From positions 186,001-250,000 of the forward strand of contig NIVC01000713.1 in assembly GCA_002269645.1 (NCBI GenBank): a stretch of 64,000 nt of DNA. The letters run 5' to 3'. Within the stretch, counting starts at the first letter, position 1; each line of letters starts with the position of its first letter. The notes under the pieces are model-generated. The model was given only the letters and a program-made list of their open reading frames with translations. It did not search any database and was not told the DNA's origin. The position numbers and the translations under genes are program-made. This document shows, piece by piece, positions 1 through 35,509 of this stretch. The DNA comes from Macrostomum lignano (lineage: Eukaryota).

Positions 1-3000
1 GACCACAGCGCACGGACTTGTGCGCCTGACGCAGGGCTCGGGACTGCGCCGCCTTATCTGGGCTCTGGCCATCCTGGGAGCCTGCGTCGGGTTCTCCCTG
101 CATCTTGCAGAGCTCACCCAGCGTTACATCAGCTACCCAGTGAACACCGAGTTCTCCAACGAAGGAGCAGACTTCAAATTTCCTACTGTGACCATCTGCC
201 CGACCAATGAGTTTGCTATGCTTGCGTCAATTTAGAGAGCAACTACTCAATTCCAGGTATGACAGTTTACTATTGTTCTCAGTTTCTGGTCTTAATTTTA
301 CGTGCTTTATCATGCCTTTCAGGGTATAAAAATGTCTTTGGACGATGATGTTTGACGCCCCGTATATTTACTACGTGCTCAGCCAGAAAGATTGGAACAC
401 TTCAGTGTCTGAATATCCATACGAATTTTACCCGGACGGAAAGTTTGCACTTCGATTTTTGGCCTATCGCGGATTCAACTTTGCCCGGGCATACGAAGTC
501 GTGATTTATTGCCGCTACAAGGCTAAGGAATGCACCTACGACAACTTCACTGTGTACAAAGATGAAAAAAAGTGAGCGAAGATAACGTTAACACATGGTT
601 AGAGGTAGAGGTGCTTCAATCAGCGCATATTTACAGTTCAAGATTAGTGAAATAAGATTGAGATTTAAATTATTCAATTTTATGGCGCTCCAGACTGAAG
701 ATGTGACTGCAGTATTACTCGTAAATTGACAAACCAACAATTTTCATCTCGTTCAGCACCTCGGAATGGACATAAAATTTTTCAGTTTCTGGTGCTACTC
801 CTTCAGTCCGTCAAACCGAAGCATCATCAATGTGGGTGAGGGCAGTGGGCTGTACCTGCTGCTCCACCTAAGAGGCGACGCGTTTCTCACTGACGAAGAA
901 CAAATTGACTACGTGCCCGGCTTCCGGGTGGCTCTGCACGAGAACGGTGAGAGAGGCTCTCCTATTTAACCTGTATCTGGGCTCCAAAGTCTGCACAGGG
1001 CCGTGGTGCCGTGCAAAAATGCTATCGAAAATTCATACTTCCTAGTATCAGTTGGACTTTGACAGCAAAATTTTATGTCAGGGACTACTAAAACAGGTGC
1101 TTCATACCTTTGTTTCATGACAGTGTTTACTGCATGGGTATTACTCCAGTAGTCCTTTCGGTTTTTTCACGCCTAGATTTCTATTCACTGTTGCACGATC
1201 GGAGGTGTGCGAACCGTTTTAATTGCTGCTGTCATCGATTATTTGTCTCCCAACACGCAAAGCATCTGGTTTTCAATGGTCTCCATTCTGTTTTTCCATT
1301 TATTTGTATGTTGCTATTTAGGATCATTTTAAAATGGCATAGATATTTTGGAATTTTCCTATATACTAAAAATGAGTTGTCTGTGGGTATGCGATAGATT
1401 TCAGAAAAATGGCTCAACCGATTTTCTTCAAACTTGCACCATTTGATCAGAAATTTTCCTGGGACGGTACATGCATCTTGGCTAAGAAATTGCTCAATTT
1501 TAAAGGGATTAAATATTCGAAAAACATGCTTTTTTGCAAAGTTCAAGCAGCTCTTTCGACCTGAAATGCATTGTAAGAATGCTAGAGAAAAAACTGACTG
1601 GCTGAAGTCCGATTGTGATAAAGATTGCATCACAACAAGTTGAAAACAGAGCCAAAGAAATGCACACACGACTTGATTAAAATTGCGTAACCATATTGCT
1701 AACTTAAATTGAGACTGATACTGGCTTACTGAGAAATTGATAATGTCATAAATTTTTACTCCAATTGACTTGCTGTAAGAATTGAATTATAAGGGCCACA
1801 ATTCATGTTCTCCAATTGAAAAGAGATAGCCAGATGCGAACAGACTGGACCGCTAATGTAGCGACCTGGGTTCGGATCTTAGTAGTGCAAAAAGATTTTT
1901 TATTAAAACACCTTAAAAACACGAAACTGCTAAACATAAAAGAAGCGCAATGTCAAACATATAAGTGGCACCACGTCGAACATTAAAAAGCCACCATGTC
2001 AAACATGAAAAGAGCTACCATGTCAAAAATATACGTGACTACATGTCAAACATATACGCGACTCCATGTCGAACATTAAAGAGCCACAATGCCAAACATA
2101 TACGTGACTGCATGTCTAACATTAAAGAGCCAGCATGTGTAACATAAAAGAGTTACCATGTGAAACATAAAAAAGACATCATGTCAAACATAAAAGAGCC
2201 ACAATCTTAAACATATACGTGACTCCATGTCAAACATTAAACACATAAAAGAGATACCATGCCACACAAAAGGGAGCCACCATGTCAAACATGAAAAAGT
2301 CACCATGTCGAACATTAAACAGCCACCATATCAAACATAAAAGAGCCACCATGTTAAACATATACGTAACTCCATGTCAAACTTTAAAGAGCCACCATGT
2401 CAAACATTGAAAAAGTCACCATGTCGAATCTTAAAGAGCCACCATGTCAAGCATAAAAGAGCCAACATGTCAAACGAGCCACCATGTCAAACATTAAACA
2501 TTAAACAGAAAAGAGGCACCATGTCAAACATAAAAGAGCCACCATTTCAAACATAAAAATGCTACCAAGTAAGACATAAAAGAGCCACCATGTCAAACAT
2601 AAAAGAGACACCATGTCAAACATAGAAGAGCCACCGTGTCAACATAGAAGAGACACCATGTAAAAAATAGAAGAGCCACCATGTCAAACATTAAAGAGCC
2701 ACCATTTCAAACATAAAAGAGCCACCGTTTCAAACATAAAAAGAAGTGTCATGCCAAACAAAATGGAGCCACTATAATGCTATGGAAATTTTTGCACTAG
2801 CTACTTGTTCTCTGGTGGATGCTTGCTATTTAAGGATAGATACTTGCTATCAGGTGGATGCTTGCTTTCTGAGGGATGCTTGCTATCCGAGGGATGCTTG
2901 CTACTGGGGTTACCTGCTATTGGGAGATGCTTGCTCTTGGGGGATGGAGGGTACTTGCTATCTGAGAGCGGGTTGCTAGATATCTATATGGTCTCTTTTT

Positions 3001-6000
3001 ATCCAGGTTATGCTTGCTATCTGGGGTTGCTTGCGGTCTAGAGGATGCTTGCTATCTGGGGGATGCTTGCTATCTGGGGGATGCTTGCTATCTGGGGGAT
3101 GCTTGCTATCTGGGGGATGCTTGCCATCTGGGGGATGCTTGATATCTGGGGTCTGGGGGATGTCTGCTATCTGGGGTCTGGGGATGCTTGCTATCTGAGG
3201 GATGCTTGCTATCTGGGGTTACTTGCTATCTGGGGGATGCTTGCAGTCTGGGGGATGCTTGCTATTTGGGGATCAATGCTTGAATGCTCTCTGGGGATGC
3301 TTGCTGTCTTGGGATGTTTTGTTTTTAGAGGGAATGTCTGTTGTTTTTCGAACATAAAAGAGCCACCATGTAGAATATTAAAGAGCAACCATGTCAAACA
3401 TTTAAGAGCCACCATATCAAACATTTAAGAGCCACCATGTCAAACATATAAGTGACTTTATGTCAAACATAGAAGTGACTTATGTCAAACATTGAAGAGC
3501 CGCCATGTCAAACAATAAAGAGCCACCATGTCAAACAATAAAGAGCCACCATTTCGAACATAAAAGATGCACAATTTCAAACGTAAAAGTAAGCGAATTT
3601 TAAAGGAGCCACTATAATGCTAAGGAAATTGTCGCACTAGCTACATATTGTCTGGGGGATGCTTGCTATTTGGGGATCAATGCTTGAATGCTCTCTGGGG
3701 ATGCTTGCTGTCTTGGGATGTTTTGTTTTTAGAGGGAATGTCTGTTGTTTTTCGAACATAAAAGAGCCACCATGTAGAATATTAAAGAGCAACCATGTCA
3801 AACATTTAAGAGCCACCAAATCAAACATTTAAGAGCCACCATGTCAAACATATAAGTGACTTTATGTCAAACATAGAAGTGACTTTATGTCAAACATTGA
3901 AGAGCCGCCATGTCAAACAATAAAGAGCCACCATGTCAAACAATAAAGAGCCACCATTTAGAACATAAAAGATGCACAATTTCAAACGTAAAAGTAAGCG
4001 AATTTTAAAGGAGCCACTATAATGCTAAGGAAATTGTCGCACTAGCTACATATTGTCTGGTGGATGCTTGCTATTTGGGGATGCTATCTATCTGGGGGAT
4101 GCTTACTATTTGGGGGATGCTTGGTATCTGGGGGATGCTTGCTATCTGGGGGATGCTTGCTGTCTTGGGATGATTTCTTTTTGCATTGCACTTCATTTGA
4201 GTATTTTGTCTGTTTTCGTTGTGAAGGCTTTATTTGGCTATCTTTTTGTTACTTGTAGAGAACAGAGATTCTATACAGATGTCCCCCAACGGGGGGCGAA
4301 GATTGCTAGTATAAAAATCTAAAAAACACAGCCCTTTTATACACTAATCGCAGGCTTCAAGCCCAATATGAAGCTGGGATTCAACGCACCCTACGGCTAC
4401 AAAACTTCTGCCCAGGTAACAGCCGAGACCGTCACCAAAGTCAACCGCAAAGGCACACCGTGCAGCAGTGAACTGCCGAATGTCACCTACACGATGAACT
4501 ACTCATGGCCTGGAAACCTTGAGAATCAGAGCTTCTTGAGCAGCACAGAAGACTGTGTGACGCGGCTCAAGCAGGAGGAGTTCAAGGAGACGTGTGGCTG
4601 CCTCAGCGCGAAGCTGGCTCTGCCCAGCGATCTCATGGATGGCACGAAAATTTGTCATAGCCTGCCGGAAGAAGCAAGTCCTAGTAGCTCGTACCATTTT
4701 TCTGCATGAGAAGGCTTCTATTGCTTTTGATAAATACATCTGAAATACGATAATGCTTTGAGTCTGTCTCAGTGGCGTCCTGTTTAAAGTAGTCCTCTGA
4801 ATCAGACGTGCCAACTCACTTCCGGTGCCAACCTAAACTTGATTTTTCAGTATTTAATGAAGAGCCGCCGCTACCAACGCAACAAGTTCGGTCTGATTGA
4901 GTACGTCATAGCACAAAATGAGTCATTAATATACGAGTCACTCACCGAATACGTCCTTAAGCACTGGCGCTTATTCAACAACACCAAAAATCTCGTTGAC
5001 TGCTATCACCGCGTCGATGACCGCCAGAATGCCGATGGAGTTCGAGCTAACCAGTGCCCAGTTCGCTGCAGCAACACCCGCTACAAGGTAGTCACTACCC
5101 TGACCAACTGGCCAAAGAACGTGACATTAGCAAGGGACATTCTTAGACGCAGCGCGAGCGCCATCCTTGCACGAATTAACGGCACAGGCCTGTCGGGACG
5201 TCGACTGGAAGTGTTGCGGGACTCTGCACACGCATCCATGAACCAGATGGTCAACCTGTCTGCTAATGATCTTCAATCGTCCAGGGACTTTATCAGCGTG
5301 CTGGACGTGTACCCAGCGTCCACCAAGACCAGCGTCTTCACTGAGTCGTTTGCCTACCAGCTACGGAGCCTGTTCTCCGACCTGGGCGGCATTCTGGGTG
5401 AGTCCCGGTATCTTATTATCTTATGGAGTTGCCAAAAAGATGTCGCATTCACTAGCTTTACAGTAGCTTTACAGAAAGGAGGTATTTATTTTTCAACACA
5501 AAATTGTTATCTCTTTTGATAGGAGGCAACTTTTGACATGTTTCGCCTTTCTTAGTGGTCTATTGCTATTCATAGAGCTTTTCGTTTAGAAAATATCCTA
5601 CGTATGCATCCAGTGCCTCAAATAATAAAAATGGCCACAGCTGGACTCAGTGGTTTTTAAGTCTATGCGAATTATTCAACTATACCCAAATACCACTGTA
5701 GTATAACAGGACGTAAAACTCAAAGAAGCAATTTTATTGCATGAAAAATCAAATTCCTTTTTCTTGATTCATGAAGGAAACAGCATACAAAGGAAAACTT
5801 CACTGCACAACTATATAAAATACGAGTGATAAAGAGTAACATGCCGTGCATTCTAAATTAAGGGAATGGTAATCTTGATTGCCCCAGATCAAATGCAACT
5901 ATTGATTTTGTGAGGAAACAATGAAAATTTTCTATATCCACAGTGCATTTTTTTCGGGAAATCGGCCTCCTAAAAATTGCACGATCTTTGAGTTTTACGT

Positions 6001-9655: not shown

Positions 9656-10080
9656 TGTGTGACAATATGCAGGATTGACATTCAGTTTTGAGTGCGTAAA
9701 TGTCTTGGCCACGAGTGCGCGAAGCGCACGAGTGCCATAGACATTGACATATGGCCAAGCATTCTTAAATTGCTGACACTATTCATTGTCTATGGCCAAA
9801 AAGCAATCCTTCACCCATAACGCGACTGTGCAGTAAATCCCAAGCCGTGCTGTAAATTCCCGCACGTATTCAACTTATTAAATTTATTTAAGTCTACCTG
9901 AGCTACTGGTCTAATTCTACCTGAGCTAATGAGCTAATCCTGCCTAAGCTACTATCTCAGTACCTGAGCTACTGACCCAATTCTACCTGAGCTACTGGTC
10001 TAATTCTACCTGAGCTACTGAGAAAATTCTAAGAACTCAAGAATTCAAGAATGTCAAGTCAAGAGTCCTGAAGTATGTAA

Positions 10081-10232
10081 GTCAAGAATATTGGCAACGC
10101 ACTCGGTCGGGACGCCTGTGATGATGTGAAGGAGGCGCTGATGATCGAGACTGCTAAAAACTGCCCCGTAGTGGCGCTCCGAATGTATCTAGGTAAACGG
10201 CGCGAGTCTTTGCCTGGAAGTTCGGCTTCAAC
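10081..10232 (+). repeat. 152-bp inverted duplicate of recombinase coding sequence (reverse complement of 10873-11024)
   Basis: Direct comparison gives 151/152 identical positions. Confidence 0.95.
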
Positions 10233-10382: not shown

Positions 10383-11775
10383 TCATTTTGGCAAATTAAA
10401 GGTGCACCCACTCACGTTCCCATGAAAGTTGAGTGTCAAGGTGACCTGTCGTAGCTCGGCATGGTTGTCGCTGTTAGCCACAGCGCGCTCTGCTGGCATA
10501 GACGTCTCCATTCGATTTGTGCCGTCCATGAATGAGTTCGCTCCATACAGCGATGAATGCAGTGTGCTGCATATGGACCGCATCTCGGATGTGCGTCGAC
10601 TTCCTAATTGCAGATACCGTTCGACTGTTTTCACCTGCTTGTGACCAGTCACTTTACAGATATCGGCATTCGAGTAACCAGCATCAGACAACTCCTTGAT
10701 GACAGTCGGACGGACACAATGGGCCGTGTAGCGCTTGCTTAAACTGGCAGCCTCCGATATATTGGTCATCATGGTTGCTAGGGTGTTCACACCAAGCGCT
10801 TGCGAAGCGCAATACCAGTTCGAGTTCTTCCACCTGATCGTTTTTGGTTTCAAGAAAAACGGTGCAGTGCACGTTGAAGCCGAACTTCCAGGCAAAGACT
10901 CGCGCCGTTTACCTAGATACATTCGGAGCGCCACTACGGGGCAGTTTTTAGCAGTCTCGATCATCAGCGCCTCCTTCACATCATCACAGGCGTCCCGACC
11001 GAGTGCGTTGCCAACATTCTTGACTTTTCCAGCCAGCAGGCGCACTGCTTGCTTACCATCTGACCTCGTCTCAAACACGAAGCTGTCTTCCTTCAGGTTC
11101 CTCAGCCATTCGCGACCACGATTACCGAAATAGTAAATCATGTTGTAATATACCTCTTGCAGCAGAGTCGTTGGAGACTGCCTGTCAAAGTAGCGCGATA
11201 ACTTTTGCATGTCTTCCAGTTCAATAGCTTGAATATGCTTCGCGCGGCCGCCCTAGAAAATAAACTTCCGAGCCATAGCCTTCAGAGTCGCGTTCGCAGT
11301 ATAGAAGGCATCGCCCTCAATGATGTTCAGTTGCCTGACACGCATCAAGTAGCGGTAGATGGCCGCACGAATGCAGATTAGCGTCGCGGGTGAATAAAAT
11401 CCGCCGTCAGGCTTACGAGCCGTGCCGTAGAACACTCGCAGCACACGGTTGACATCCTCCGGCTCAGCCGTCAGCAGGTCAATTTTTAATGACGGATTTG
11501 AATCCATGAAGGCCAACAGCCTTTTGACGTACTGATCAGTCTGTCGTCTGGTATTGTTACTCGCTACACTGTCTTCTAGGTCGTTGATAGCTTTTTCGAG
11601 GTCTTCAACGTTGGGCACGCAGTCGAACATGCCATCCAGGTCAATATCCTCGGGCAGCACAAACTCTCCATCTCCATTTGACGGTTGCTCGACCGGACGC
11701 TCGTCTATTTGCTTTTCCATAAACCGCTCCTCGGTTTGCTGTTGAAGGAGAATGTCAATCTGTGATGATGACAAC
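10383..11775 (-). pseudogene. Crypton (CryptonA/DUF3504-like) tyrosine recombinase, main body. It has one in-frame TAG at 11253-11255 and is separated from its N-terminus by the P element
   Basis: Catalytic motifs: GNRGRE (R), YTAHCVR (HxxR), TGHK (H), VERY (Y). Also seen are KPDGGFYSPATLICIRAAIYRYL and a C-terminal FHGNVSGCTFN. ORFs 11253..11819 and 10383..11210 are in the same frame, with 14 open codons between them. Confidence 0.88.
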
Positions 11776-14362
11776 CAGGGACAACTAAAACCCTCAGGAC
11801 GCGAAACGAGCCAATTCATGGCAAAAAATCTGAGGGGCTCGCTTAAATGTATTGTTCTATGGCTTTTTCAAGTCTTCTCTGCTATCAAGCAAATTAAAAT
11901 TGCTTTAGCTGCGGCCAGCAGTGAAGCTAAGCTGAACTATATCAAGAGAAGCATTTTTTATTTACTTGATGAAATGCCAAGAAAGTGCAGCGTATTTCCG
12001 TGCTCGTCAAATTACAACTCTGAAGCCGTTCGAACACGGACATTTGCGTTTCCCAGAGATCCACAGGAGCGAGAGCGATGGAGAAAGGCGCTGCCAAATA
12101 TTCTCCAGGTAAGAAACCAGATCATTTGCTGTCATTACTGCTGCATAATTCCGCTTCAATTCTGCATGCCAGTCTCGTCCAAACAACTGAAACCCAAAAT
12201 TTATTATTTTAGAGAGTGACTGACAATATGGGCGTGTGCGTAAAGCATTGGCCAAGCGATGCTCCAATGGTCAAGAAAAACTCTACCGAAAGGCTAATTA
12301 ATCCTCCTTCTGTTTTTAACGGAGTTCCTAGCTCGTGTTTTGTTCAGAACCAAGGTACGTAACTTAAAGATTGCTCAACACTTAGCGTCTATATCGATTT
12401 TGCCGCTCACAATTATCTTACTTTTATTTTTACTCTTATTTTAGACCAGGACCGACAGGCGAACAGAACGAAGACGTTTACTTGTATACGTTAGATAAAG
12501 ATGGAGACCTGTCTGTTCGAATTTTGCTTTGCTTTGTTCGAAGTGTTTTGCTTTATTTAGCGATGGAAGAGAGAAGCCATGGATTGGAACGGATGCTGCA
12601 CAGGAGTCGGAAGTCTTCATGCTGTTCGATTTCGTTCACATTATCAAATGCATTCGCAACAATTGGCAAATTGAAGCGAATGGAATTCTAAGCATTCAAC
12701 CTCCTGGCGCTGACAGACAAATATCCGCTAAATGGTCAGACGTGGTACGCCTGTACCAAATGGAGAAAGACCACGTAGTCAAGCGCACATGTCTAACTCA
12801 TGAGGCCTGTTATCCCACAAGCATTCAGAAAACTAAAGTCAGTCTCGCTCTCCAAGTTCTCGATGAAAGGGTTGCCGCTGCATTGAAGTGTGATGGATAC
12901 TCAGACACTGCGGAATTTATCAAAACCATAGTGAGATTCTGGAAAATTGTCAAGTGTAAAAATCCTGGTCTACACGCACGACTACGGGATCCGGACAGGC
13001 GACCAGTCTATTCCGTTCAAGATGAAAGCATACAATTTCTTAGCGCGCTCGCGGATTCGTTTGATTCGACACATTGTGGAAAAGGCCGAGCTCGCCATCA
13101 TTCATTGACGCCCGAGACCAAGTCAGCGCTAGTAAACTCACTGCGCGGAGCCTGTGAGATGCGTGAGGTTCTTTTTTCCGACCCACGAATCAGCTACGTT
13201 CTGCTGGCTGACTTTCACAGTGATCCACTTGAGGCTGAGTTTGGCGTGTATCGCCAAATGAGCGGCGGCAACTACTATGTATCTGTGGAGCAAGTGCTGC
13301 TCAGTGCTCGACTCCGACAAATGAAATTATTCGCATCCCTTGAATTAGCAGACTACAAGCACGATCGGAGCAAATGTTGCAATGAACAGCTGAATGAAAT
13401 TGAACTGGCGACCATTGATAATTGTGCTGCTAAATCAGAGGAGCTTTCCATTTCGGAGATGGCTTCGCTCTACTATATCGCAGGTAAGCTGGATATTAAT
13501 TAAAATTTAATTCACAACGAGGTTTTACACAATCTCATAAAAACAATTCAAACCGTGCTTTATTGGAAATTGACAGGTTATACAGCGACTAAAGAATGCA
13601 TCAAAGGAACAGATTTGATATCAGAGACGAGCATTCCAGCCAGCGAATTCACTGAAGAGTTATCTCGCGGAAAGCTTTGTCATCCTCCACAATGGCTGTT
13701 AGACTTATCCTGTCTCTGCTACAGCAGTTTTATTCTGCACTCTCCTACGTGCGCAACTCGCGTGCAGAAGCTGTTTTATGTTATTAAGGACTTTTACTTT
13801 CCAACTAAGACACAGTTCAGCATGGACAGTGTGTCCCGTCGGCTAGCCAACGTTTTTTTTCAAAGGACTAGTAAGACGCTCGTCAAAACTCCCACCAATA
13901 CCGACGACATCCCATGATAGAAAGCTTCGGAAGTTAGATGCTCAGTAGGTGAAGTTCCAGCGTTTCCTTTATGTACGAGCTACTGACTGTTTGTGTCGTC
14001 TTGTCCTTGGAGTTCCGTATTTGCTTCTATCTTCTTGCCATTGGAGTTTCATCTTCGCTTTCATCCTTTATCTTCTTGCCGTTGGAGTTTCATCTTCGCT
14101 TTCATCTTTTATCTTCTTGCCGTTGGAGTTTTTTGTTGATATGGCGGTTACTTTATTGTAAATACATTGTAATTATATCACTGGTTCCTATTCTTTAAAT
14201 TAAATACTCGACATTGCCTCGCTTTACTATTTAATCTAACCGTTAATGCCTGATAGCAGAGAAGACTTGAAAAAGCCATAGAACAATACTTTTAAGCGAG
14301 CCCCTCAGATTTTTTGCCATGAATTGGCTCGTTTCGCGTCCCGAGGGTTTTAGTTGTCCCTG
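11776..14362 (+). mobile_element. P-superfamily (THAP) DNA transposon, 2587 bp, apparently internally deleted
   Basis: 112-bp TIRs at 11776-11887 and 14251-14362 (2 mismatches) begin CAGGGACAAC. An exact 8-bp TSD, ATGACAAC, lies at 11768-11775 and 14363-14370. The element contains THAP and P-transposase coding sequence. Confidence 0.95.
11974..13948 (+). pseudogene. THAP-domain P-element transposase. Exons 11974-12108, 12213-12354, 12445-13483 (disrupted near 12445-12530), 13577-~13948
   Basis: THAP C2CH (MPRKCSVFPC...FAFP...W...VCVKHW...PSVF) spans a phase-matched GT-AG intron. Core motifs present are FDFVHIIKCIRNNW, SDPLEAEFGVYRQMSGGNYY and the spliced YYIAG|YTA. The region expected to hold the first two catalytic Asp residues is not visible. 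A probable extra T in the run at ~13853-13860 shifts the C-terminal frame. Confidence 0.85.
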
Positions 14363-14438
14363 ATGACAACCCAGAAATGGCTTCTCCTGGCAGTTTCTTG
14401 TAGTCTACATAGTAGAAACGCTTAGCCGGTGGCTCCAT
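14363..14438 (-). pseudogene. Displaced N-terminus of the Crypton-like recombinase (MEPPAKRFYYVDYKKLPGEAISGLS)
   Basis: The ATG is at 14438. After removing the P element and one TSD copy, these 76 nt join 11767 in frame (…GLS-SSQIDILL…). Confidence 0.85.
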
Positions 14439-14763
14439 GGTCAAATTGTAGGTCGATGGTCAAGTTGTAGGTCGCGTGATTTATAGACACTTCTTAAACT
14501 TCAAACGCTTTTAAAGTTATATGTCAATGTGGCCTCAAGTGCGCCAGGGTGCACATAGCCCCTGACTCTATTCGAAGAAGTGGATTCGGAAGCATGTTTG
14601 AATGACTTGTTTAGCAAAATGAGTAACTTACATTTGCACCCAGATCGAAATGAATTCATAGAATTATTAGATCGACATTGAGGTCAGCATCGTCGTTAAA
14701 GTAAAGGCTGCCTTTTGTTGTGTTAAATCAGTCCTGCTGCAATTCGAAACCCTACTGTTTCTG

Positions 14764-15565
14764 TTGCGCCGATGCGTGGGTCGACGTCAACCAAAGAGGC
14801 GGCTCAGTGTGCTTGGCTACGCCAACAATCTCGCCCTTCTGTCTTCAACTGTCGAGGGCGCCCAACGACAACTGGACAAGCTAGTTGCTGTTTCGGCGAG
14901 TGTTGGCCTGGTGGTCAACACGCAGAAAACCGTCGTGCTCTGCGTGCCGGACGACACCGAGGCTTCAAATTTGTGCCGAGGCGCTGATGGACAGGTGACA
15001 GAGCTTCCGCGTTGTCAGCAGTTCATCTACCTCGGCGGTCTGGTTCCCGGCATCGCCGTGGGCTTGCTTTTGCCTGCTTTTCGTTCTGTGAGGGCAAGTC
15101 CTGCAGTCCGAGGCCTTATACCCGACCGCCAGAGGGCGGCGTTGTTCCAGGCGATCGAGACCTTACTGTTGTACAACGCCGATCGAGACCTGGACGATGA
15201 CGGACTTGCTCGAGCAACAGGTTGACGCAGCTCACACTGGCCTGCAGCTGCGCGCCACCTTCAAGATCGCGGCTACGAGCGAGTAGCCAACGCGGCTTTG
15301 CATTACTGCGCCGGCCTGGTCTGTCCAAGTGCCCTAGCTGTTGCGCCGTCGGCGGACTCCAGCTAGCAGGCTACATCATCCGCGGTGAGTCGTACTACCC
15401 AGAGCCGGTGCAGGAGGTACTTCTGCTGACGCTGCAGACACCCTATCGGCATGGGGGAGGCCCGAACTCGGCGCTTCGTCGACTGCCTGCTGGCTTACGC
15501 TGGCGCCCCGGATTCGGTCGGTGGCGTGGCGTTCGTTCGCGACCTGGCCCTGAGGCGTGACCTGT
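14764..15565 (+). mobile_element. 5'-truncated, degenerate non-LTR (LINE) reverse transcriptase fragment
   Basis: LSVLGYANNLALL resembles a mutated YADD motif. It is followed by GLVVNTQKTVVL and FIYLGG (RT domains 5-7). The downstream part is frameshifted. Confidence 0.78.
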
Positions 15566-22800: not shown

Positions 22801-25800
22801 GTTATAAGTTATGTTTACAGTCTTTATACTTATCTGCAATAACAACAAATTTTTAGACTTAGAATTATTCCTAGTGATTTTGTTTTTACCCAAGCCTTAG
22901 TGGTTTGTTGCTACCAAGATTAAGGAACCAGGACAGAAGTACAAGGGATTCTTCATTCAAAAGATATAAATCAATAGAAAAAATGCAATATATACAATCG
23001 GTTTATAAGTATTCGTCTCTTAGATACAAAAGTATACTAGGACTAAGTATACTAGTAGGATAAAAGCATATCTGTTTTATTGCGTATGTTGCCAAATATT
23101 GCCAAATCTTGTCCTGTTTCTGGTTTACAATGAAAATTTGCCACACCCCCCTCTAACGCAGATCATCTCTGCTCAGCCAGAGGTGACAAGCCGTCTCGAG
23201 CTGACTGATGAGGGTCGCCAAGTTGCCGACCATGGCAGCCACGAGGCTGTGCTGTTTGCCAGCGTGCCAGCTGGCGATGGCGCACCGCAGAGCGAGCTGA
23301 TGAAGTCTGTGCCCAATGCGAAAATCGGGTTTAGCAAGGTTTGTTTAACCCAAGTTGAACTTGGCTTTTTTAACTACAGGATCAGATATAGAAATCTAGC
23401 GCATGGCTGCGGTCAAGAGAGAAGAGAGGGGAGAGGAGGCGAAAGGGGAGAGGGGGTGACAGGGGGGAGAAGGAGAGGAGGGGAGCAAGGAAAGAGGAGA
23501 GGAGAAAGGAGAGAGGAGAGGAGAGGAGAAAGGTAAGGAGAGAGGAGAGGAGAAAGGTAAGGAGAGAGGAGAGGAGAAAGGTAAGGAGAGAGAAGAAAGG
23601 TAAGGAGAGAGGAGAGGAGAAAGGTAAGGAGAGAGGAGAGGAGAAAGGTAAGGAGATAGGAGGGGAGAAAGGTGAGGAGAGAGGAGAGGAGAAAGGTAAG
23701 GAGAGAGAAGAAAGGTAAGGAGAGAGGAGAAAGGTAAGGAGAGAGGAGAGGAGAAAGGTAAGGAGAGAGAAGAAAGGTAAGGAGAGAGGAGAAAGGTAAG
23801 GAGATAGGAGGGGAGAAAGGTAAGGAGAGAGGAGAGGAGAAAGGTAAGGAGAGAGGAGAGGAGAAAGGTAAGGAGAGAGGAGAGGAGAAAGGTAAGGAGA
23901 GAGGAGAAAGGTAAGGAGAGAGGAGAAAGGTAAGGAGAGAGGAGGGGAGAAAGGTAAGGAGAGAGAAGAAAGGTAAGGAGAGAGGAGAAAGGTAAGGAGA
24001 GAGGAGGGGAGAAAGGTAAGGAGAGAGGAGTAAGGTAAGGAGAGAGGAGGGGAGAAAGGTAAGGAGAGAGAAGAAAGGTAAGGAGAGAGGAGAAAGGTAA
24101 GGAGAGAGGAGGGGAGAAAGGTAAGGAGAGAGGAGAAAGGTAAGGAGAGAGGAGAGGAGAAAGGTAAGGAGAGAGGAGAAAGGTAAGGAGAGAGGAGGGG
24201 AGAAAGGTAAGGAGAGAGGAGAGGAGAAAGGTAAGGAGAGAGGAGAGGAGAAAGCTGAGAAGAGACAAACCTTTTGGCCCTCAAGCCGGATTTTGCCGAG
24301 CCCTGACTTGAATATATCTACATCATTTATACTCGTACAGACTACTTATAAATAGAACTTAGTACTATTTTGGGTTTTAAATAGCTCTCTTTTAGACAGA
24401 GGATGCTGGCCATGACTTTGTATCCGAGGTGTAGTTCTCTATATAATAATTTTAAGTATTATTCTGAACCCTACAAGTTTGAAACATTCTCCCCTGGGCT
24501 TTGCCAGGCCCTGGCTAACAGATGGATCCGCCTAGACAAATCTGCTCCGGGTGGACCGCGAGTTTATCGCCAAGTTGAGTCCGTGTCCGACCGAATCCGT
24601 CACTGCCTACAGATGGTTGCCGCTCTTAGCCTTGACAGCTTGACAGCCGAGGAGCGAGCCGAGCTCAAGAAGCGCAAACTGGTGCAGGAGGGCCGGGTTA
24701 CAGTCTATAGGGTTGCTAAGTGAGCTGAGTACTGTTGCTGTTCGGGTTGCTATGGAACTGTTTGGTTTAGTTAGCCTGTAGACTGTAGTCTAGTCTGTAT
24801 TGTGCTGTAGCCTAGTCTGTAGTTTGCTGTAGTCTAGGCTGTATTTTGCTTTAGTCTAGGCTGTAGTTTGCTGTAGTTTAGGCTGTATTTTTCTTTAGTC
24901 TAGGCTGTAGTTTGCTGTAGTCAGGGCTGTATTTTGCTGTAGTCTAGCCTGTAGCCTGCTGTAGTCCAGCCTGTAGTCTAGCCTGTAGCCTGCTGTAGTC
25001 TAGCCTGTAGTGTGATGTAGTCTAGCCTGTAGTGTGATGTAGTCTAGCCTGTAGCCTGCTTTAGTCTAGCCTGTAGCCTGCTGTAGTCTAGCCTGTAGTG
25101 TGATGTAGTCTAGCCTGTAGCCTGCTGTAGTCTAGCCTGTAGTGCGATGTAGTCTAGCCTGTAGTGTGATGTAGTCTAGCCTGTAGTGTGATGTAGTCTA
25201 GCCTGTAGTGTGATGTAGTCTAGCCTGTAGCCTGCTGTAGTCTAGCCTGTAGTGTGATGTAGTCTAGCCTGTACTGTAGACTTTTGGACTCCTTTACGGT
25301 CTGAAAGTTAAGGCTAACTGAAAAGGAATTGAAGATCGAAAATTATAAGCCGACCAACTCTGAGCAACTCTACCGCCTCACCAAATCCGCCACACAGAGG
25401 CCCAGCCTTCACCCTAACCCTGGCCAAGGAGGAAACCGAACTCACCGCCGAGATGCTGGCCACCGGCGTCTGGCAAACGCTGACATTCAAAGCGTACAAT
25501 TTCAAAGCTCTGGGACAGCAACCCGACTGCGGTCATCTGCATCCTCTGCTGAAGGTTCGCGCCGAATTCCGACAGATCTTCTTGGAGATGGGCTTCCAGG
25601 AGATGCCCACCAATCGGTACGTTGAGAGTAGCTTCTGGAATTTCGACGCGTTGTTCCAGCCACAGCAGCATCCGGCTAGGGACGCTCACGACACCTTCTT
25701 CCTAACTGAGCCGGCCGCCTGTCGGCTGGATGCTGAGCAGGCCGACGGCTACCTGGCCAGGGTCAAGGCTGTGCATAGCAACGGCGGCTACGGCTCGATT

Positions 25801-28240: not shown

Positions 28241-28500
28241 TTTGCGATCCTGAGTCGAGTCATTTGTGATCCTGAGTCGTGTCATTTGTGATCCTGAGTC
28301 GTGTCATTTGTGATCCTGAGTCGAGTCATTTGTGATCCTGAGTCGTTTCATTCGTGATCTTGAGTCCAGTCATTTGTGATCCTGAGTCGTTTCATTCGTG
28401 ATCTTGAGTCCAGTCATTTGTGATCCTGAGTCGAGTCATTCGTGATCTTGAGTCCAGTCATTTGTGATCCTGAGTCCAGTCATTTGTGATCCTGAGTCGA
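28241..28500. repeat. 22-bp minisatellite (TTTGTGATCCTGAGTCGAGTCA)
   Basis: About 12 tandem copies are visible. Confidence 0.9.
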
Positions 28501-28879
28501 CTGATTTTGCATGCCAACGGATTAGTGTAATTAGCAATTTCTCTGAAACCCCGTTTCCATCAAAGGTGGATTCATTTTTTGCTTTAGATTTGCTGTTTCC
28601 CACTGTCAATGGGCTGCTGTGTGATGCGTTTTTTTAAATTGCAGTTCGGGACTTGGCCGCAAAAAATCTACCGACTATCAATTAAAGTTGAGTTCTCTCT
28701 ATTGAATTCCTGTTCCATACTGATTGCCAATAGGATGTACTTTAACCTTAGTTGACTTGTTTACTACATATCCAGGCGGTTTCAATTCAAGATTTACTGT
28801 CTCAATTTCGTATTCGCTAATGCCTCTATATTTTACACTTAGGATATATGACTATGTACTTTGTACTATATGTACTATG

Positions 28880-30123
28880 TACTATGAACAGCTACATAAT
28901 CTAGGCTGTGAACAGTTGCATAATCTAGGCTATGAACAGCTACATAATCTAGGCTATGAACAGCTACATAATCTAGGCTATGAACAGCTACATAATCTAG
29001 GCTATAAACAGTTGCATAATCTAGGCTATGAACAGTTGCATAATCTAGGCTATGAACAGCTACATAATCTAGGCTATGAACAGTTGCATAATCTAGGCTA
29101 TGAACAGTTGCATAATCTAGGCTATGAACAGCTACATAATCTAGGCTATGAACAGCTACATAATCTAGGCTATGAACAGCTACATAATCTAGGCTATGAA
29201 CAGCTACATAATCTAGGCTATGAACAGTTGCATAATCTAGGCTGTGAACAGTTGCATAATCTAGGCTATGATCAGTTGCATAATCTAGGCTGTGAATAGT
29301 TGCATAATCTAGGCTGTGAATAGTTGCATAATCTAGGCTGTGAATAGTTGCATAATCTAGGCTATGAACAGCTACATAATCTAGGCTATGAACAGCTACA
29401 TAGTCTAGGCTATGAACAGCTACATAATCTAGGCTATGAACAGCTACATAATCTAGGCTATGAACAGCTACATAATCTAGGCTGTGAACAGTTGTATAAT
29501 CTAGGCTATGAACAGCTACATAATCTAGGCTATGAACAGCTACATAATCTAGGCTATGAACAGTTGCATAATCTAGGCTATGAACAGTTGCATAATCTAG
29601 GCTATGAACAGCTACATAATCTAGGCTATGAACAGTTGCATAATCTAGGCTGTGAACAGTTGCATAATCTAGGCTGTGAATAGTTGCATAATCTAGGCTA
29701 TAAACAGTTACATAATCTAGGCTGTGAATAGTTTCATAATCTAGGCTATGAACAGTTGCATAATCTAGGCTATGAACAGTTGCATAATCTAGGCTATGAA
29801 CAGTTGCATAATCTAGGCTATGAACAGTTGCATAATCTAGGCTATGAACAGTTGCATAATCTAGGCTATGAGCAGTTACATAATCTAGGCTATGAACAGT
29901 TGCATAATCTAGGCTATGAACAGTTGCATAATCTAGGCTATGAACAGTTGCATAATCTAGGCTATGAACAGTTGCATAATCTAGGCTATGAACAGTTGCA
30001 TAATCTAGGCTATGAACAGTTGCATAATCTAGGCTATGAACAGTTACATAATCTAGGCTGTGAACAGTTGCATAATCTAGGCTATGAGCAGTTACATAAT
30101 CTAGGCTGTGAACAGTTGCACAT
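28880..30123. repeat. 24-bp minisatellite (TATGAACAGYTRCATAATCTAGGC)
   Basis: About 50 near-identical copies; the source of the (YEQLHNLG)n ORFs. Confidence 0.96.
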
Positions 30124-30744
30124 TTAGGGGATTAGTTGAACCCTGAACTAAAATGGGATTTACTTTAGATTTTGTGTCAGTTTGTACGAGTTTTCGGTAT
30201 GTGGAGAGGCTTGGGCTTAGGAAGCGAAATCTATTAACAATAAAGCATATATTGTATAAGTTTGCTGCCAAGATTATCACTATAATTACTTTCACTATCT
30301 TGCGCCACTCGGGCAGTCCGCAGTCTTCATCTTATAAGGCCTTTGGTTTTGTAATTAACTGTGCAAATTTCGCTAGCAGAGCCCGCTGCAGCCCAGTTGC
30401 TTCGCTGCGCCCAAATTGACTTTTTAACGGAGCGTGCGCTGGGTTCGATATTTCGGATTGCTGCTTTCTTAGCTGGGATTGCCTCAGTTTGTGTCTTGGG
30501 CTGCTTCGATTGTACTTTTATGTCGGTCAAATTCTTTTGTAGAAATTAATGAGCGCGAGAGCCGTTCCTTTTTGACTGAGCAAAAACTCGTAAAACTTTC
30601 AGGCCCGTGTGGAGAATCTTAACGCAATAGTTGCGTAAATTGCTTGGCTTCTTTTTATCAAAATTTCAGTTTTTTCCTTTTTCTGAGCTACTTTCATCTT
30701 CTCTGTCCTGCACTTTTTCTGCTCCCTTCCTCTCACAGCTTCTC

Positions 30745-31430
30745 CACTCTAACCTCATCTCACCCTCCTACCCACTTCACCCTCATCTCAGCCTCCCCAC
30801 TCCACCCTCATCTCACCCTCCTACCCACTCCACCCTCATCTCACCCTCCTACCCACTCCATCCACCCTCATATCACCCTCCTACCCACTCCACCCTCCTC
30901 ATCCTCCCCACTCCACCCTCATCTCAGCCTCCCCACTCCACCCTCATCTCACCCTCCTACCCACTCCACCCTCATCTCACCCTCCTACCCACTCCACCCT
31001 CATCTCACCCTCCTACCCACTCCACCCTCATCTCACCCTCCTACCCACTCCATCCACCCTCATATCACCCTCCTACCCACTCCACCCTCCTCATCCTCCC
31101 CACTCCACCCTCATCTCACCCTCCTACCCACTCCACCCTCATCTCACCCTCCTACCCACTCCACCCTCATCTCACCCTCCTACCCACTCCATCCACCCTC
31201 ATATCACCCTCCTACCCACTCCACCCTCCTCATCCTCCCCACTCCACCCTCATCTCAGCCTCCCCACTCCACCCTCATCTCATCCTCTTCTCCACTCCAC
31301 CCTCATCTCACCCTCCCCACTCGACCCTCATCTCACCCTACTCCCCCCTCTACCCTCATCTCATCCTCTTCTCCACTCCACCCTCATCTCACCCGCCTCC
31401 CCTCTACCTTCATCTCCTCTCCCCATTCCT
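30745..31430. repeat. C-rich ~28-bp minisatellite (CCACTCCACCCTCATCTCACCCTCCTAC)
   Basis: The array has almost no G on the + strand and lies upstream of the CISD3-like ORF. Confidence 0.93.
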
Positions 31431-31709
31431 CCTTTTTTCCTTAATCTTAACCTCTACCGCTTATCCCCAACCCTCTCCTAGTTATCCTCTGTTCCCTTTT
31501 CTTGTTTTTTCTCTCTTTCCATTACAGCCCTACTCTCAGCTTTCTTTGTTCCACGGCACCTTCTGTCTGCTTCTCACTTTTTATCCCCTTGTATTTTCAG
31601 ACGCATTATGAGTTACAATCGCAATCTTGTTGACAAATAGCGACTAATCTTGAATTGATATTTTTAGGATTTTAGGAGTTTCGGAGTCCCTATCTTGAGT
31701 TAATTAAAA

Positions 31710-32228
31710 ATGCTCAAACCGATGCATGCCGAGATGCAGAAAGCATTTACAATCTGCTGCGGCAGAACTGGCCACAGCCTGTTCAGCCAGCCTGTCCGTC
31801 ACGGCCGCTACCTCATGCCCGGCTCGCTGCACCTGCCATTTCACCAGCGATTCGACGTCAACACCGGAGACCGATTGCCAAACCCGCACCCGGAGACTCC
31901 CCGCTACAAATCCCTGTCTCCCAGCAGGCCGCCGGCCATCCAGAAGACCAAGCCGTTCCGGTTCGAAGCCAAGGCTGGCAAAACCTACTGGTGGTGCAGC
32001 TGCGGTCTGTCTCACACGCAGCCGCTCTGCGACGGGCATCACAAGCGGATTAATAAGCTGATTGACGCCGGTCACTACACTGTCAACTATCCGAATTACC
32101 GACCAGTTAAACTCTGCTTAGATGAGGACAAGGCCGTGTGGCTGTGCCAGTGCAAGCGGACTAAATCGCCACCTTATTGCGATGGCAGTCACAGAAATCC
32201 TGAGGTGCAACAGGTTAAAGAGGTCTGA
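31710..32228 (+). CDS. CISD3: CDGSH iron-sulfur domain protein, two-domain CISD3/MiNT type, intronless, 172 aa
   Basis: Two CDGSH-type motifs: WWCSCGLSHTQPLCDGHH and WLCQCKRTKSPPYCDGSH. The N-terminus is basic, consistent with a mitochondrial presequence (inference). Confidence 0.92.
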   Translation: MLKPMHAEMQKAFTICCGRTGHSLFSQPVRHGRYLMPGSLHLPFHQRFDVNTGDRLPNPHPETPRYKSLSPSRPPAIQKTKPFRFEAKAGKTYWWCSCGLSHTQPLCDGHHKRINKLIDAGHYTVNYPNYRPVKLCLDEDKAVWLCQCKRTKSPPYCDGSHRNPEVQQVKEV

Positions 32229-32389
32229 TAAAGTAGATTTGGATGCTGGCTGACTGTGTGTGACTTCTTATTTTGTCATCTTGAATCACTTTTAATGTCT
32301 GGTGCTTGTTTCGCGTTGGCAACGGGTTCTTTAGATCCAATTGTTAGTATATTAGATTTAATTAGCTGCCTTTTAACACTCCTTGAGGC

Positions 32390-33480
32390 CACCCCCTCCC
32401 TGAGAATCGGCCACCACCCCTCTGAGAATCGCCCATCACACACCTCCCTGAGAATCGCCCATCACACCCCTCCCTGAGAATCGCCCATCACACCCCTCCC
32501 TGAGAATCGCCCATCACACCCCTCCCTGAGAATCGCCCATCACACCCCTCTCTGAGAATCGCCCATCACACCCCTTCCCTGAGAATCGCCCATCACACTC
32601 CTCTCTGAGAATCGCCCATCACACCCCTCCCTGAGAATCGCCCATCACACCCCTCCCTGAGAATCGCCCATCACACCCTCTCTGAGAATCGCCCATCACA
32701 CCCCTCCCTGAGAATCGCCCATCACACCCTCTGAGAATCGCCCATCACACCCCTCCCTGAAAATCGCCCATCACACCCCTCCCTGAGAATCGCCCATCAC
32801 ACCCCTCCCTGAGAATCGCCCATCACACCCTTGAGAATCGCCCATCACACCCCTCCCTGAGAATCGCCCATCACACCCCTCCCTGAGAATCGCCCATCAC
32901 ACCCCTCCCTGAGAATCGCCCATCACACCCCTCCCTGAGAATCGCCCATCACACCCCTCTCTGAGAATCGCCCATCACACCCCTTCCCTGAGAATCGCCC
33001 ATCACACTCCTCTCTGAGAATCGCCCATCACACCCCTCCCTGAGAATCGCCCATCACACCCCTCCCTGAGAATCGCCCATCACACCCTCTCTGAGAATCG
33101 CCCATCACACCCCTCCCTGAGAATCGCCCATCACACCCTCTGAGAATCGCCCATCACACCCCTCCCTGAAAATCGCCCATCACACCCCTCCCTGAGAATC
33201 GCCCATCACACCCCTCCCTGAGAATCGCCCATCACACCCTTGAGAATCGCCCATCACACCCCTCCCTGAGAATCGCCCATCACACCCTCTGAGAATCGCC
33301 CATCACACCCCTCCCTGAGAATCGCCCATCACACCCTTGAGAATCGCCCTTCACACCCTTGAGAATCGCCCTTCACACCCTTCGGTATCGCCCTTCACAC
33401 CCTTCAGTATCGCCCTTCACACCCTTGAGAATCGCCCTTCACACCCTTGAGAATCGCCCTTCACACTCCTGAGAATCGCC
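32390..33480. repeat. ~26-bp minisatellite (CCCTGAGAATCGCCCATCACACCCCT) with a 409-bp higher-order duplication
   Basis: Tandem copies; the variant CTGAAAATCG recurs at 32757 and 33166. Confidence 0.95.
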
Positions 33481-33934
33481 CATCCTGCTGCCGGGAATTT
33501 GTATTATAAAAATTTGCTTCAAAAAACTTGCAATTCAACTTGTTAAAATTGTCACCACTTCCTGCATTGTTTCAGTTTTTGCTTATGTGGAGTTTTTTTG
33601 GCTATGGCTGATTTTATTCAAGCCATCCTGAACCAGCATTCAGTGCTTTAATCCATCCGGAATTCAATGTCTGAATTGCATTCATGATTTGAAAAGATTT
33701 GAACGGAAGGCTAAAGAAAGATATTCGCTTTTCCATGTTGCATTAGGAATACGCATTGGCCATTGTCATCAGCTTCAAATTAATACAACAGACAAGTCGC
33801 TTAAGAAATTAGTTTTGTCAATTATAATTAATCTTATACGGCAGCTTTCTGTTGAATTAAAATTATTTTAGTCTCCGAAGGCATTTTTTATATGACGTCT
33901 TCTATATGCTTTACCTTCTACTATTTATATCTTA

Positions 33935-34915: not shown

Positions 34916-35509
34916 ACTACCCTTTCAATGTGCATTTCAAGCATGTCCTGCTACCTTATAGAACCCTCTGTACAATCCAAAAACAGACAGACAGACAAAA
35001 GTCTCATAGTTGTGCCCTCAGCTGCACATTATGCAGTCCTATTCTTTTCTCGCGTGTAAGCAAATTGCTTGTGAATAAAAGCAAGCTTTGTAAGAGGTGT
35101 TGTAGGTGGTGATTAGCCGAGCCAAACTAATCACCACCCTGTCTGTGTCCAAATTGCACACCTCTTGATGGCCAGGCCATAGGTAATGCTTTTTCTACGA
35201 ATTCACTTGCCTATCTTCACCTACATCTGCCGAAATTATTGTTTTTGTTTAAAGAGGGAATTCCAAGCCATTAGGGAGAAGGCGAGATGGAAGCCATGCA
35301 TATATCTGACGCCCATAAGTCTGGACTAAGATTTGTTTTACTTTTGGACAGGTTGACCTCGCCAAATTGCACTTTTAATTGCATAATAAAAGGTTTTTAG
35401 AACCCGAAAATTTGAAGTATGACAAGCGATCTACGCCCCTCGTTGGGGAGCAAAGAAAGAATGTAATAATTTAAAAAAAATAAACTACACATAGGTTCTG
35501 ACCTTAGAC

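What the first reader, a model, noticed from the sequence alone, without database searches (positions are those of the whole stretch)
10383..14438. P element inserted into a Crypton tyrosine recombinase gene, with its TIR supplying a replacement in-frame start codon
Seen: the THAP/P element (11776-14362) has an exact 8-bp TSD. Removing it joins ATG 14438 in frame to the recombinase body, giving a 486-codon frame (MEPPAKRFYY...GLSSSQIDIL...). In the present allele an ATG inside the left TIR (11819, minus strand) is also in frame, so about 15 TIR-encoded residues (MNWLVSRPEGFSCPW) replace the native ~23. The two enzymes' genes are now head-to-head, about 150 bp apart. Established: Crypton recombinases and THAP transposases have both been domesticated repeatedly in animals. 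Inference: a bidirectional P promoter could drive both genes, making a chimeric two-enzyme unit. It could equally be a chance insertion, since the in-frame match has a 1-in-3 prior.
Basis: partly seen in the sequence, partly recalled or inferred. Interest (0 to 1): 0.82.

Follow-up and report, generated by a model that had tools for sequence, protein, structure and literature searches.

The report
Broken P transposon inside a dead Crypton
A deletion-crippled P-type transposon has landed inside the coding sequence of a Crypton-type recombinase gene that also carries a premature stop codon, so this is an ordinary transposon nested in a transposon in a repeat-rich flatworm genome, not a new two-enzyme unit.

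Summary
A 2587-bp P-like element (11776-14362) has 116-nt TIRs and an exact 8-bp TSD (ATGACAAC). It splits a minus-strand Crypton-like tyrosine recombinase gene between codons 23 and 24, inside an N-terminal motif (P.G.ISGLS) conserved in homologues. An ATG in the left TIR (11819) is in frame with the downstream recombinase frame and lies 154 bp from the THAP ATG.

The functional reading fails because both genes are dead.
- **Recombinase:** an in-frame TAG sits at codon 197 of 486 (11253-11255), in a gap-free, conserved alignment block. The TIR-initiated ORF is only 188 aa and lacks the whole catalytic domain.
- **P copy:** compared with five 96-99% identical sibling copies in Macrostomum lignano GCA_002269645.1, it has two internal deletions. 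These remove the HTH and RNase H N-terminal domains and both catalytic Asp motifs, and the frame stops after 108 aa.

None of the five siblings sits in a Crypton. One (L004) sits in a retrotransposon integrase gene with the same TIR ATG in frame (388-aa ORF), so the in-frame start looks like a by-product of an open outward TIR frame.

Verdict: ordinary nested TE insertion, low interest.

The parts
11776..14362 (+). Non-autonomous (internally deleted) P-superfamily DNA transposon, 2587 bp
   Evidence: TIRs and TSD. THAP and TNP-like GBD Pfam hits. 96-99% DNA identity to five 3.4-3.6 kb copies in M. lignano GCA_002269645.1.
11776..11891 (.). Left (5') terminal inverted repeat, 116 nt
   Evidence: 97% complementary to 14247-14362. 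The same TIR is present at both ends of L001-L005.
14247..14362 (.). Right (3') terminal inverted repeat, 116 nt
11768..11775 (.). Target-site duplication, left copy ATGACAAC
   Evidence: Sibling copies have their own 8-9 bp TSDs.
14363..14370 (.). Target-site duplication, right copy ATGACAAC
14371..14438 (-). Native start and first 23 codons of the Crypton-like recombinase (MEPPAKRFYYVDYKKLPGEAISG), now cut off from the body. In the present allele this start reads into the right TIR and stops after 48 codons.
   Evidence: The N-terminal motif is conserved in P0001, P0003 and P0005-P0008.
10383..11775 (-). Body of the Crypton-like tyrosine recombinase pseudogene (codons 24-486 plus stop). It holds DUF3504/Phage_integrase homology and intact R-K-HxxR-H-Y motifs.
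   Evidence: Pfam DUF3504 1.4e-10, QRICH1, Phage_integrase. 51-55% identity to P0001 in a single colinear match. PDB profile hits to QRICH1 and, weakly, to integrases, XerA and Cre.
11253..11255 (-). Premature in-frame stop codon TAG (codon 197 of 486)
   Evidence: It aligns without a gap to a variable residue before a conserved GG in eight homologues, so it is a nonsense codon and not an intron.
11253..11819 (-). Chimeric ORF of 188 aa. It starts at the ATG in the left TIR (15 TIR-encoded residues) and continues into the recombinase N-terminal region only.
   Evidence: No gene with this product is on record.
11974..12108 (+). P element exon 1 (THAP domain, first part), followed by a GT donor
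   Evidence: 91-98% identical to P0016 (M. lignano BOX15_Mlig002392g1).
12213..12354 (+). P element exon 2 (THAP domain, second part)
12445..12494 (+). Start of exon 3. It runs into the first deletion junction and a TAG at 12492-12494, so the longest product from the THAP ATG is about 108 aa.
   Evidence: frame worked out from the sequence
12463..12541 (+). Two internal deletion junctions with short filler DNA. About 150 bp and about 750 bp are missing compared with the sibling copies.
   Evidence: The missing part encodes the HTH (PF12017) and RNase H N-terminal (PF21787) domains and the FDEMYI and SDNHPTN motifs.
12541..13483 (+). Remaining transposase coding sequence (GTP-binding insertion domain and RNase H C-terminal part), open but detached from the THAP exons
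   Evidence: Pfam TNP-like_GBD 2.7e-8. 58% identity to P0009 residues 314-632.
13577..13917 (+). Last transposase exon (C-terminal region), after a 93-nt intron at 13484-13576
   Evidence: P0056 and P0013 support the splice donor after 'YYIA'.
13994..14150 (.). 41-bp subterminal tandem repeats of the P 3' end
   Evidence: Copy number varies among siblings.
10079..10232 (.). Inverted 154-bp duplicate of recombinase CDS 10873-11026 (1 mismatch), lying 150 bp beyond the recombinase stop codon

Best explanation
This is a nested insertion of one dead mobile element in another, in the genome of Macrostomum lignano or a very close relative.

1. A Crypton-type element, encoding a stand-alone, intronless tyrosine recombinase of 486 codons, was hit by a P-superfamily cut-and-paste transposon 69 bp into its ORF.
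2. The insertion made the usual 8-bp target-site duplication.
3. The P copy is a non-autonomous deletion derivative. It keeps both 116-nt TIRs and the THAP exons, but has lost the HTH domain and the RNase H N-terminal half with the first two catalytic aspartates. It could only have been mobilised in trans (inferred).
4. The recombinase gene also carries a nonsense mutation at codon 197.
5. The TIR has an outward-facing ATG followed by 14 open codons. Any insertion into an ORF in the right phase (1 in 3) therefore makes an ATG-headed fusion ORF. Here that ORF is a 188-aa catalytically empty fragment.

No function is implied.

Shown: anatomy, TSD, conserved split motif, stop codon, deletions, sibling copies. 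Inferred: trans-mobilisation, order of events, absence of function.
For: - TIRs and TSD.
- The reconstituted N-terminus matches a motif conserved in homologues.
- TAG at codon 197 lies in a gap-free conserved block.
- The recombinase is colinear with P0001 over 377 residues with no frameshift.
- Catalytic motifs are present only downstream of the stop.
- The P copy lacks residues 105-447 of full-length P0010 and 1-313 of P0009.
- Those residues hold PF12017 and PF21787.
- Both deletion junctions carry filler DNA when aligned to sibling L004.
- The catalytic triad of P transposases (DmTNP D230, D303, E531) lies in the RNase H fold split by the insertion domain: PMC8230255.
- Five sibling copies, 96-99% identical, have their own flanks and TSDs, and none is in a Crypton.
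- L004 shows the same TIR-ATG fusion to a retrotransposon integrase.
- Internally deleted non-autonomous P copies are the norm in this superfamily: PMC7776569.
Against: - No expression data could be consulted, so transcription of the chimeric ORF or of the THAP exons is not excluded.
- The stop codon rests on one assembled sequence. A base error or an allele without it cannot be excluded.
- Both P copies found inside coding sequence (the window and L004) have the TIR ATG in frame. That is 2 of 2, with a chance of about 1/9, which is too few to interpret.
- Whether the recombinase gene belongs to a multi-copy, mobile Crypton could not be tested, because no eukaryotic genome search was available.
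Confidence: 0.9

Rival explanations
1. First reader's proposal. The P 5' end acts as a bidirectional promoter, and the TIR ATG re-heads the recombinase. The locus is then a functional chimeric unit expressing a THAP transposase and a tyrosine recombinase divergently.
For: - The geometry is as described: head-to-head ATGs 154 bp apart, with the TIR ATG in frame.
- The ATG is the first one on a minus-strand transcript starting within about 100 nt upstream, read from the sequence.
- The recombinase catalytic motifs are still intact downstream.
Against: - TAG at codon 197 ends the TIR-started ORF at 188 aa, before every catalytic residue.
- The transposase frame stops after 108 aa and lacks the HTH and RNase H N-terminal domains.
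- None of the five sibling P loci has a Crypton next to it.
- None of the five has an annotated minus-strand gene starting at the left TIR.
- The chimeric protein is not on record in a 15-billion-protein collection.
Confidence: 0.02
2. The truncated products are functional regulators. The 108-aa THAP-only peptide would act as a KP-like repressor of the P family. The 188-aa TIR-headed N-terminal recombinase fragment, which covers the QRICH1-like N-terminal domain, might act as a DNA-binding or dominant-negative factor for Cryptons.
For: - In Drosophila, small internally deleted P elements often encode THAP-containing repressors such as the 207-aa KP protein (PMC7776569).
- The THAP exons and their splice sites are intact here.
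- The 188-aa ORF covers the region matching Pfam QRICH1 domain residues 102-193.
Against: - The 108-aa product lacks the dimerisation region that lies downstream of THAP in full-length relatives.
- No expression evidence is available.
- No conservation of this particular truncated form was found.
- The QRICH1-domain hit is below the Pfam cut-off (28.7 against 30.8 bits).
Confidence: 0.06
3. The internal TAG is a sequencing or assembly error, or is specific to this haplotype. A full-length recombinase with a swapped N-terminus could then be made from the TIR ATG.
For: - It is a single-base defect. One substitution gives GAG (Glu) or TCG (Ser), the residues seen at this column in homologues.
- The rest of the frame is clean over 486 codons.
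Against: - Substitution errors are uncommon in polished assemblies.
- Without the stop, the product would still lose the conserved N-terminal P.G.ISG motif.
- The partner P copy would still be enzymatically dead, so there would be no two-enzyme unit.
Confidence: 0.04

Closest known systems
P-superfamily DNA transposons (Drosophila P element; zebrafish Pdre; THAP9 relatives), especially their internally deleted non-autonomous copies such as KP
   Same: - N-terminal THAP domain, GTP-binding insertion domain, terminal inverted repeats and an 8-bp TSD.
- A family of near-identical copies that includes internal-deletion derivatives with filler DNA at the junctions.
- A short THAP-only reading frame remains.
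   Different: - TIRs are 116 nt, against 31 nt in Drosophila and 13 nt in zebrafish.
- Sibling copies show 8- or 9-bp TSDs.
- Protein identity to characterised P and THAP9 proteins is too low for a single-sequence PDB hit.
- The host is a flatworm.
Crypton DNA transposons (animal CryptonA-like, DUF3504-related tyrosine recombinases; Kojima & Jurka 2011, PMC3212892)
   Same: - A stand-alone, intronless ORF of about 450-500 aa.
- Its only recognisable domain is a tyrosine recombinase matching DUF3504 and Phage_integrase, with the catalytic R-H-R-Y residues retained.
- A very large family: 1143 representatives at E<=1e-30.
   Different: - This copy is a pseudogene, with a nonsense codon and a transposon insertion.
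- Element termini, copy number and mobility were not established here.
- Assignment to a Crypton subgroup was not tested, because no Repbase references were available.
Domesticated Crypton-derived DUF3504 genes (QRICH1, ZMYM2-4, KCTD1, KIAA1958, WOC)
   Same: Sequence homology. The best Pfam hit is DUF3504 and the best PDB hit is QRICH1 (9hjt, 6.8e-5).
   Different: - Those genes have lost the catalytic tetrad and are fused to other domains.
- This gene and its homologues keep R, K, HxxR, H and Y and have no extra domain.
- This copy is decaying, not conserved.
Nested TE insertions in repeat-rich genomes
   Same: One TE is interrupted by another, with a clean TSD. The sibling P copy in L004 is likewise nested in an LTR-retrotransposon pol gene.
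   Different: Nothing substantive.

Membership tests
P superfamily transposon | N-terminal THAP zinc-finger DNA-binding domain | tested here: met
   Pfam THAP, E=1e-7, 33.1 bits against a cut-off of 23.9, on the spliced exons 11974-12108 and 12213-12354.
P superfamily transposon | RNase H-like DDE catalytic domain interrupted by a GTP-binding insertion domain | tested here: not met
   - The GBD is present (PF21788, 2.7e-8).
- The RNase H N-terminal domain (PF21787) and the FDEMYI and SDNHPTN motifs are deleted from this copy.
- Those features are present in the sibling copies, so the family qualifies and this copy is a deletion derivative.
P superfamily transposon | Terminal inverted repeats | tested here: met
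   116 nt, 97% complementary. The same TIRs are at both ends of five other copies.
P superfamily transposon | 8-bp target-site duplication | tested here: met
   ATGACAAC on both sides. Siblings: two with 8 bp, two with 9 bp, one with none.
P superfamily transposon | Multiple copies at different sites, including internally deleted ones | tested here: met
   Five copies of 3415-3648 bp, 96-99% identical, on five contigs of GCA_002269645.1 with different flanks. The window copy is 2587 bp.
Crypton (tyrosine-recombinase DNA transposon) | Tyrosine recombinase domain with the catalytic tetrad R-H-R-Y | tested here: met
   - R242 (RGRE), K275, H375-x-x-R378, H401 and Y410 are present and conserved across homologues.
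- DUF3504 scores 41.9 bits against a cut-off of 29.7.
- Phage_integrase scores 25.0 bits, just under its cut-off of 27.1.
- Weak profile hits to XerA, Int and Cre fall over the same C-terminal region.
Crypton (tyrosine-recombinase DNA transposon) | Recombinase is stand-alone: not part of a DIRS/Ngaro-type gag-RT-YR unit, and no long terminal repeats | tested here: inconclusive
   - The ORF has its own conserved start.
- The homologue P0001 sits alone on a 1713-bp transcript-like contig.
- Most relatives are 400-480 aa and match over their full length.
- No RT Pfam hit was found in the adjoining ORF 14764-15225.
- Element borders were not defined.
Crypton (tyrosine-recombinase DNA transposon) | Repeated, mobile element with definable termini | not testable with these tools
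   - No eukaryotic genome collection could be searched.
- No second copy was found in the 64-kb window or in 107 kb of sibling loci.
- No protein more than 51% identical is in the database.
Crypton (tyrosine-recombinase DNA transposon) | Intact recombinase ORF (for an active copy) | tested here: not met
   TAG at codon 197, and a P insertion between codons 23 and 24.
Domesticated DUF3504 gene (QRICH1/ZMYM/KCTD1 type) | Loss of catalytic residues, fusion to other domains, conserved intact ORF | tested here: not met
   Catalytic residues are retained. There is no other domain. The ORF is broken. Definition taken from PMC3212892.
   Both ORFs are broken. Zero of five sibling P loci have a Crypton.

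The most novel reading that the evidence does not exclude
The outward-facing ATG plus 14 open codons at the ends of this flatworm P family's 116-nt TIR may be an evolved 'portable start codon'. It would let the interrupted host or TE ORF be re-expressed from the insertion. Both P copies found inside coding sequence have it in frame: the window (Crypton) and L004 (retrotransposon integrase, 388-aa ORF). In the window it would yield only an N-terminal recombinase fragment.
Probability: 0.03. Interest if true: 0.45.

Novelty: new member of a known kind. Interest (0 to 1): 0.1.

Why it matters
It matters little. The locus documents a P-superfamily family with unusually long (116-nt) TIRs in Macrostomum lignano. 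The sibling copies differ by only a few per cent and sit at different sites, each with its own TSD, which suggests fairly recent mobility. It also documents a Crypton-type recombinase pseudogene, and it shows that P copies in this genome nest inside other TEs. It gives no evidence for a new chimeric enzyme system. The one practical point is for annotation. The TIR of this family carries an outward ATG that creates spurious ATG-headed fusion ORFs, so gene finders may call them as genes.

Tried and rejected
- Exact-sequence look-ups of the window's chimeric 188-aa ORF, the 275-aa recombinase C-terminal ORF and the 324-aa P ORF found nothing on record. The collection gave no allelic or paralogous contigs for the window locus itself. 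The absence of closer Crypton proteins (best 51%) therefore says little about genomic copy number.
- A single-sequence PDB search with the P conceptual protein found nothing.
- I considered an intron as the explanation for the internal TAG. I rejected it because the homologue alignment is gap-free across it.
- The similarity between the flank of the L001 P copy and the window's right flank was inspected and is only a few scattered matches.
- I considered splicing the P element out of the recombinase mRNA through cryptic sites in the TIRs. I did not pursue it, because the codon-197 stop would remain.
- The bacterial promoter scanner was not used, because it does not apply to a metazoan.
- Bacterial, viral and metagenome collections were not scanned, because they cannot hold the relevant flatworm loci.
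Full report
**Observation.** The region was read directly and its repeats were computed. Arms 11776-11891 and 14247-14362 form a 116-nt inverted repeat, 97% complementary. They are flanked immediately by the direct repeat ATGACAAC at 11768-11775 and 14363-14370. Removing the element and one repeat copy joins the ATG at 14438 (minus strand) in frame to the long minus-strand frame that ends at 10383. The junction reads MEPPAKRFYYVDYKKLPGEAISG|LSSSQIDILL. The ATG at 11819 inside the left TIR opens a frame, MNWLVSRPEGFSCPW, that runs out of the element in phase with LSSSQ.... The THAP ATG is at 11974, so the two ATGs are divergent with 154 bp between them. These parts of the finding are confirmed.

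**The insertion is real and lies in coding sequence.** A protein search with the reconstituted frame found eight relatives at 31-51% identity. One is a Macrostomum lignano 'DUF3504 domain-containing protein'. In the alignment, most homologues begin with a segment of the type 'LI(D/N)F..(F/I)P.G.ISGLS...I'. The window's rebuilt N-terminus (YVDYKKLPGEAISGLSSSQI) matches it, with the P element sitting between ISG and LSS. A chance juxtaposition would not restore a conserved motif.

**What the interrupted gene is.**
- Pfam gives DUF3504 (1.4e-10, above cut-off). It also gives QRICH1 domain and Phage_integrase, both just under their cut-offs.
- A profile of the nine sequences hits QRICH1 in the PDB (6.8e-5). 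It also hits integrases, XerA and Cre weakly over the C-terminal catalytic region.
- The residues expected of an active tyrosine recombinase are present and conserved: R242 in RGRE, K275, H375-x-x-R378, H401 and Y410.
- By the criteria of Kojima and Jurka (PMC3212892), DUF3504 is the Crypton recombinase domain. Domesticated DUF3504 genes have lost the tetrad, whereas this gene has not.
- The gene has no other domain and is intronless. Homologues are stand-alone proteins of 400-500 aa, for example P0001 alone on a 1713-bp contig.
- A full scan of 1.84 billion representatives found 1143 relatives at E<=1e-30, mostly matching over their full length.

'Crypton-type recombinase gene' is therefore a fair name. 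I could not establish the element's ends, its copy number or its mobility.

**The recombinase frame is not open.** Codon 197 of the 486 is TAG (11255-11253, minus strand). It lies in the block ...LKAMARKFIF*GGRAKH..., which aligns without gaps to ...LKAMARTFIAAGGRPGH... and its relatives. It is therefore a nonsense codon and not an intron. All catalytic residues lie downstream of it. The native start now reads 48 codons and stops inside the right TIR. The TIR start gives a 188-aa ORF (11253-11819) that holds only the N-terminal region. Apart from this stop and the insertion the frame is clean: a single colinear 377-residue match to P0001. That suggests a young pseudogene.

**The P element is a deletion derivative.**
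- A search with the conceptual transposase found full-length relatives of 800-940 aa.
- It also found P0016, M. lignano BOX15_Mlig002392g1, which is 91% identical over the aligned N-terminal fifth of the query and 98% over the second THAP exon.
- Its contig and those of four cluster members gave five sibling copies, L001-L005. They are 3415-3648 bp long, carry the same 116-nt TIRs and are 96-99% identical to the window copy.
- Compared with all five, the window copy lacks about 150 bp and about 750 bp. Short filler sequences sit at both junctions.
- At protein level, residues 105-447 of P0010 and 1-313 of P0009 have no counterpart. Those residues hold the HTH domain PF12017 and the RNase H N-terminal domain PF21787.
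- The sibling sequence that is missing encodes FDEMYI and LVSDNHPTN. I take these to carry the first two catalytic aspartates, by homology with the D-D-E triad of DmTNP and THAP9 (PMC8230255). This last step is inference.
- From the THAP ATG the spliced frame reaches TAG at 12492-12494 after 108 codons.

This copy cannot encode a transposase. Internally deleted non-autonomous copies are typical of P families (PMC7776569).

**Is the composite a unit?** None of the five sibling P copies has Crypton sequence within 10 kb on either side, by BLASTN or TBLASTN. Four of the five have their own 8-9 bp TSDs, all different, so they are independent insertions. The annotation of those contigs shows no minus-strand gene starting at the left TIR.

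One sibling is an instructive control. In L004 the P copy sits inside a retrotransposon integrase gene. The same TIR ATG is in frame there and heads a 388-aa ORF. After removing the element, the integrase frame continues upstream across the junction. The 'replacement start codon' is therefore a property of the TIR, which has an outward ATG followed by 14 open codons. It will appear whenever the element lands in an ORF in the right phase. Two in-frame cases out of two coding insertions has a chance of about 1/9, which is too few to read anything into.

**Source organism.** The 96-99% DNA identity of the P copy to five loci of GCA_002269645.1 indicates M. lignano or a very close relative. So do the M. 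lignano protein hits. The window is otherwise full of minisatellite arrays and TE fragments, consistent with that repeat-rich, redundant, allotetraploid genome (PMC12801592).

**Conclusion.** Those two defects remove the basis for a chimeric two-enzyme unit. The best explanation is an ordinary nested insertion of a non-autonomous P element into a decaying Crypton copy.

**What remains untested.** Transcription was not tested. The TAG was not verified in reads. The genome-wide copy number of this Crypton and of the composite is unknown.

Noticed in passing
window 10079-10232 and 10873-11026: A 154-bp piece of the recombinase coding sequence is duplicated in inverted orientation, with 1 mismatch, 150 bp beyond the gene's stop codon. 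The catalytic C-terminal third of the gene plus its 3' flank (640 bp) is therefore bracketed by near-perfect inverted repeats. The cause is unknown: a fold-back or template-switch rearrangement, or an assembly artefact.
   Followed up: partly
L004 8869-10035 (minus strand), M. lignano NIVC01001410.1: A sibling P copy is nested in an LTR-retrotransposon integrase gene. The same TIR ATG (MNWLVSRPEGFSCPW) is in frame and gives a 388-aa ORF with a complete H2C2 plus integrase core.
   Followed up: yes
L001-L005, about position 11380 of each locus: All five longer sibling P copies share a reading-frame change just upstream of the FDEMYI motif. The annotated proteins read '...NCVICLTKCTYN...' and stop soon after. 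They also look non-autonomous, although they sit at different sites with their own TSDs. No intact autonomous copy was seen.
   Followed up: partly
window 13362-13488 (P exon) and protein P0056 (MetaClust UPI0007A19620): An 811-aa database protein begins with 43 residues identical to this P exon, up to its splice donor. It then continues into Dpy-30-like and tubulin domains. This is a chimeric transcript or gene model, which suggests that P-element exons are spliced onto host genes in this species.
   Followed up: no
window 11767-11775 / 14362-14370, and L002-L005 element ends: Target-site duplications of this P family are 8 bp in three copies and 9 bp in two. If the terminal G of the TIR is counted, all can be read as 9-bp repeats that start with G and mostly end with C. 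This hints at a target preference.
   Followed up: partly
window 13994-14150: There are 41-bp tandem repeats in the 3' subterminal region of the P element. Their copy number differs among sibling copies. They may be transposase-binding repeats.
   Followed up: no
window 1932-3994, 23466-25277, 28241-36377, 39136-40472, 46232-46835, 61950-62294: There are many minisatellite arrays (periods 11-69 bp, up to 1.2 kb long). Some have strong strand compositional skew, with GC skew from +0.37 to -0.47.
   Followed up: no
window 4839-5519 (+), 52935-55236 (+), 59758-60501 (+): Other coding remnants are present: an amiloride-sensitive sodium channel (ASC) fragment, a Ty3/gypsy-type pol (RT, RNase H, integrase), and an SH3-domain ORF.
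   Followed up: partly
window 14429-14466: A 19-bp tandem duplication (GTGGCTCCATGGTCAAATT / GTAGGTCGATGGTCAAGTT) overlaps the native recombinase start codon and its 5' flank. Its significance is unknown.
   Followed up: no
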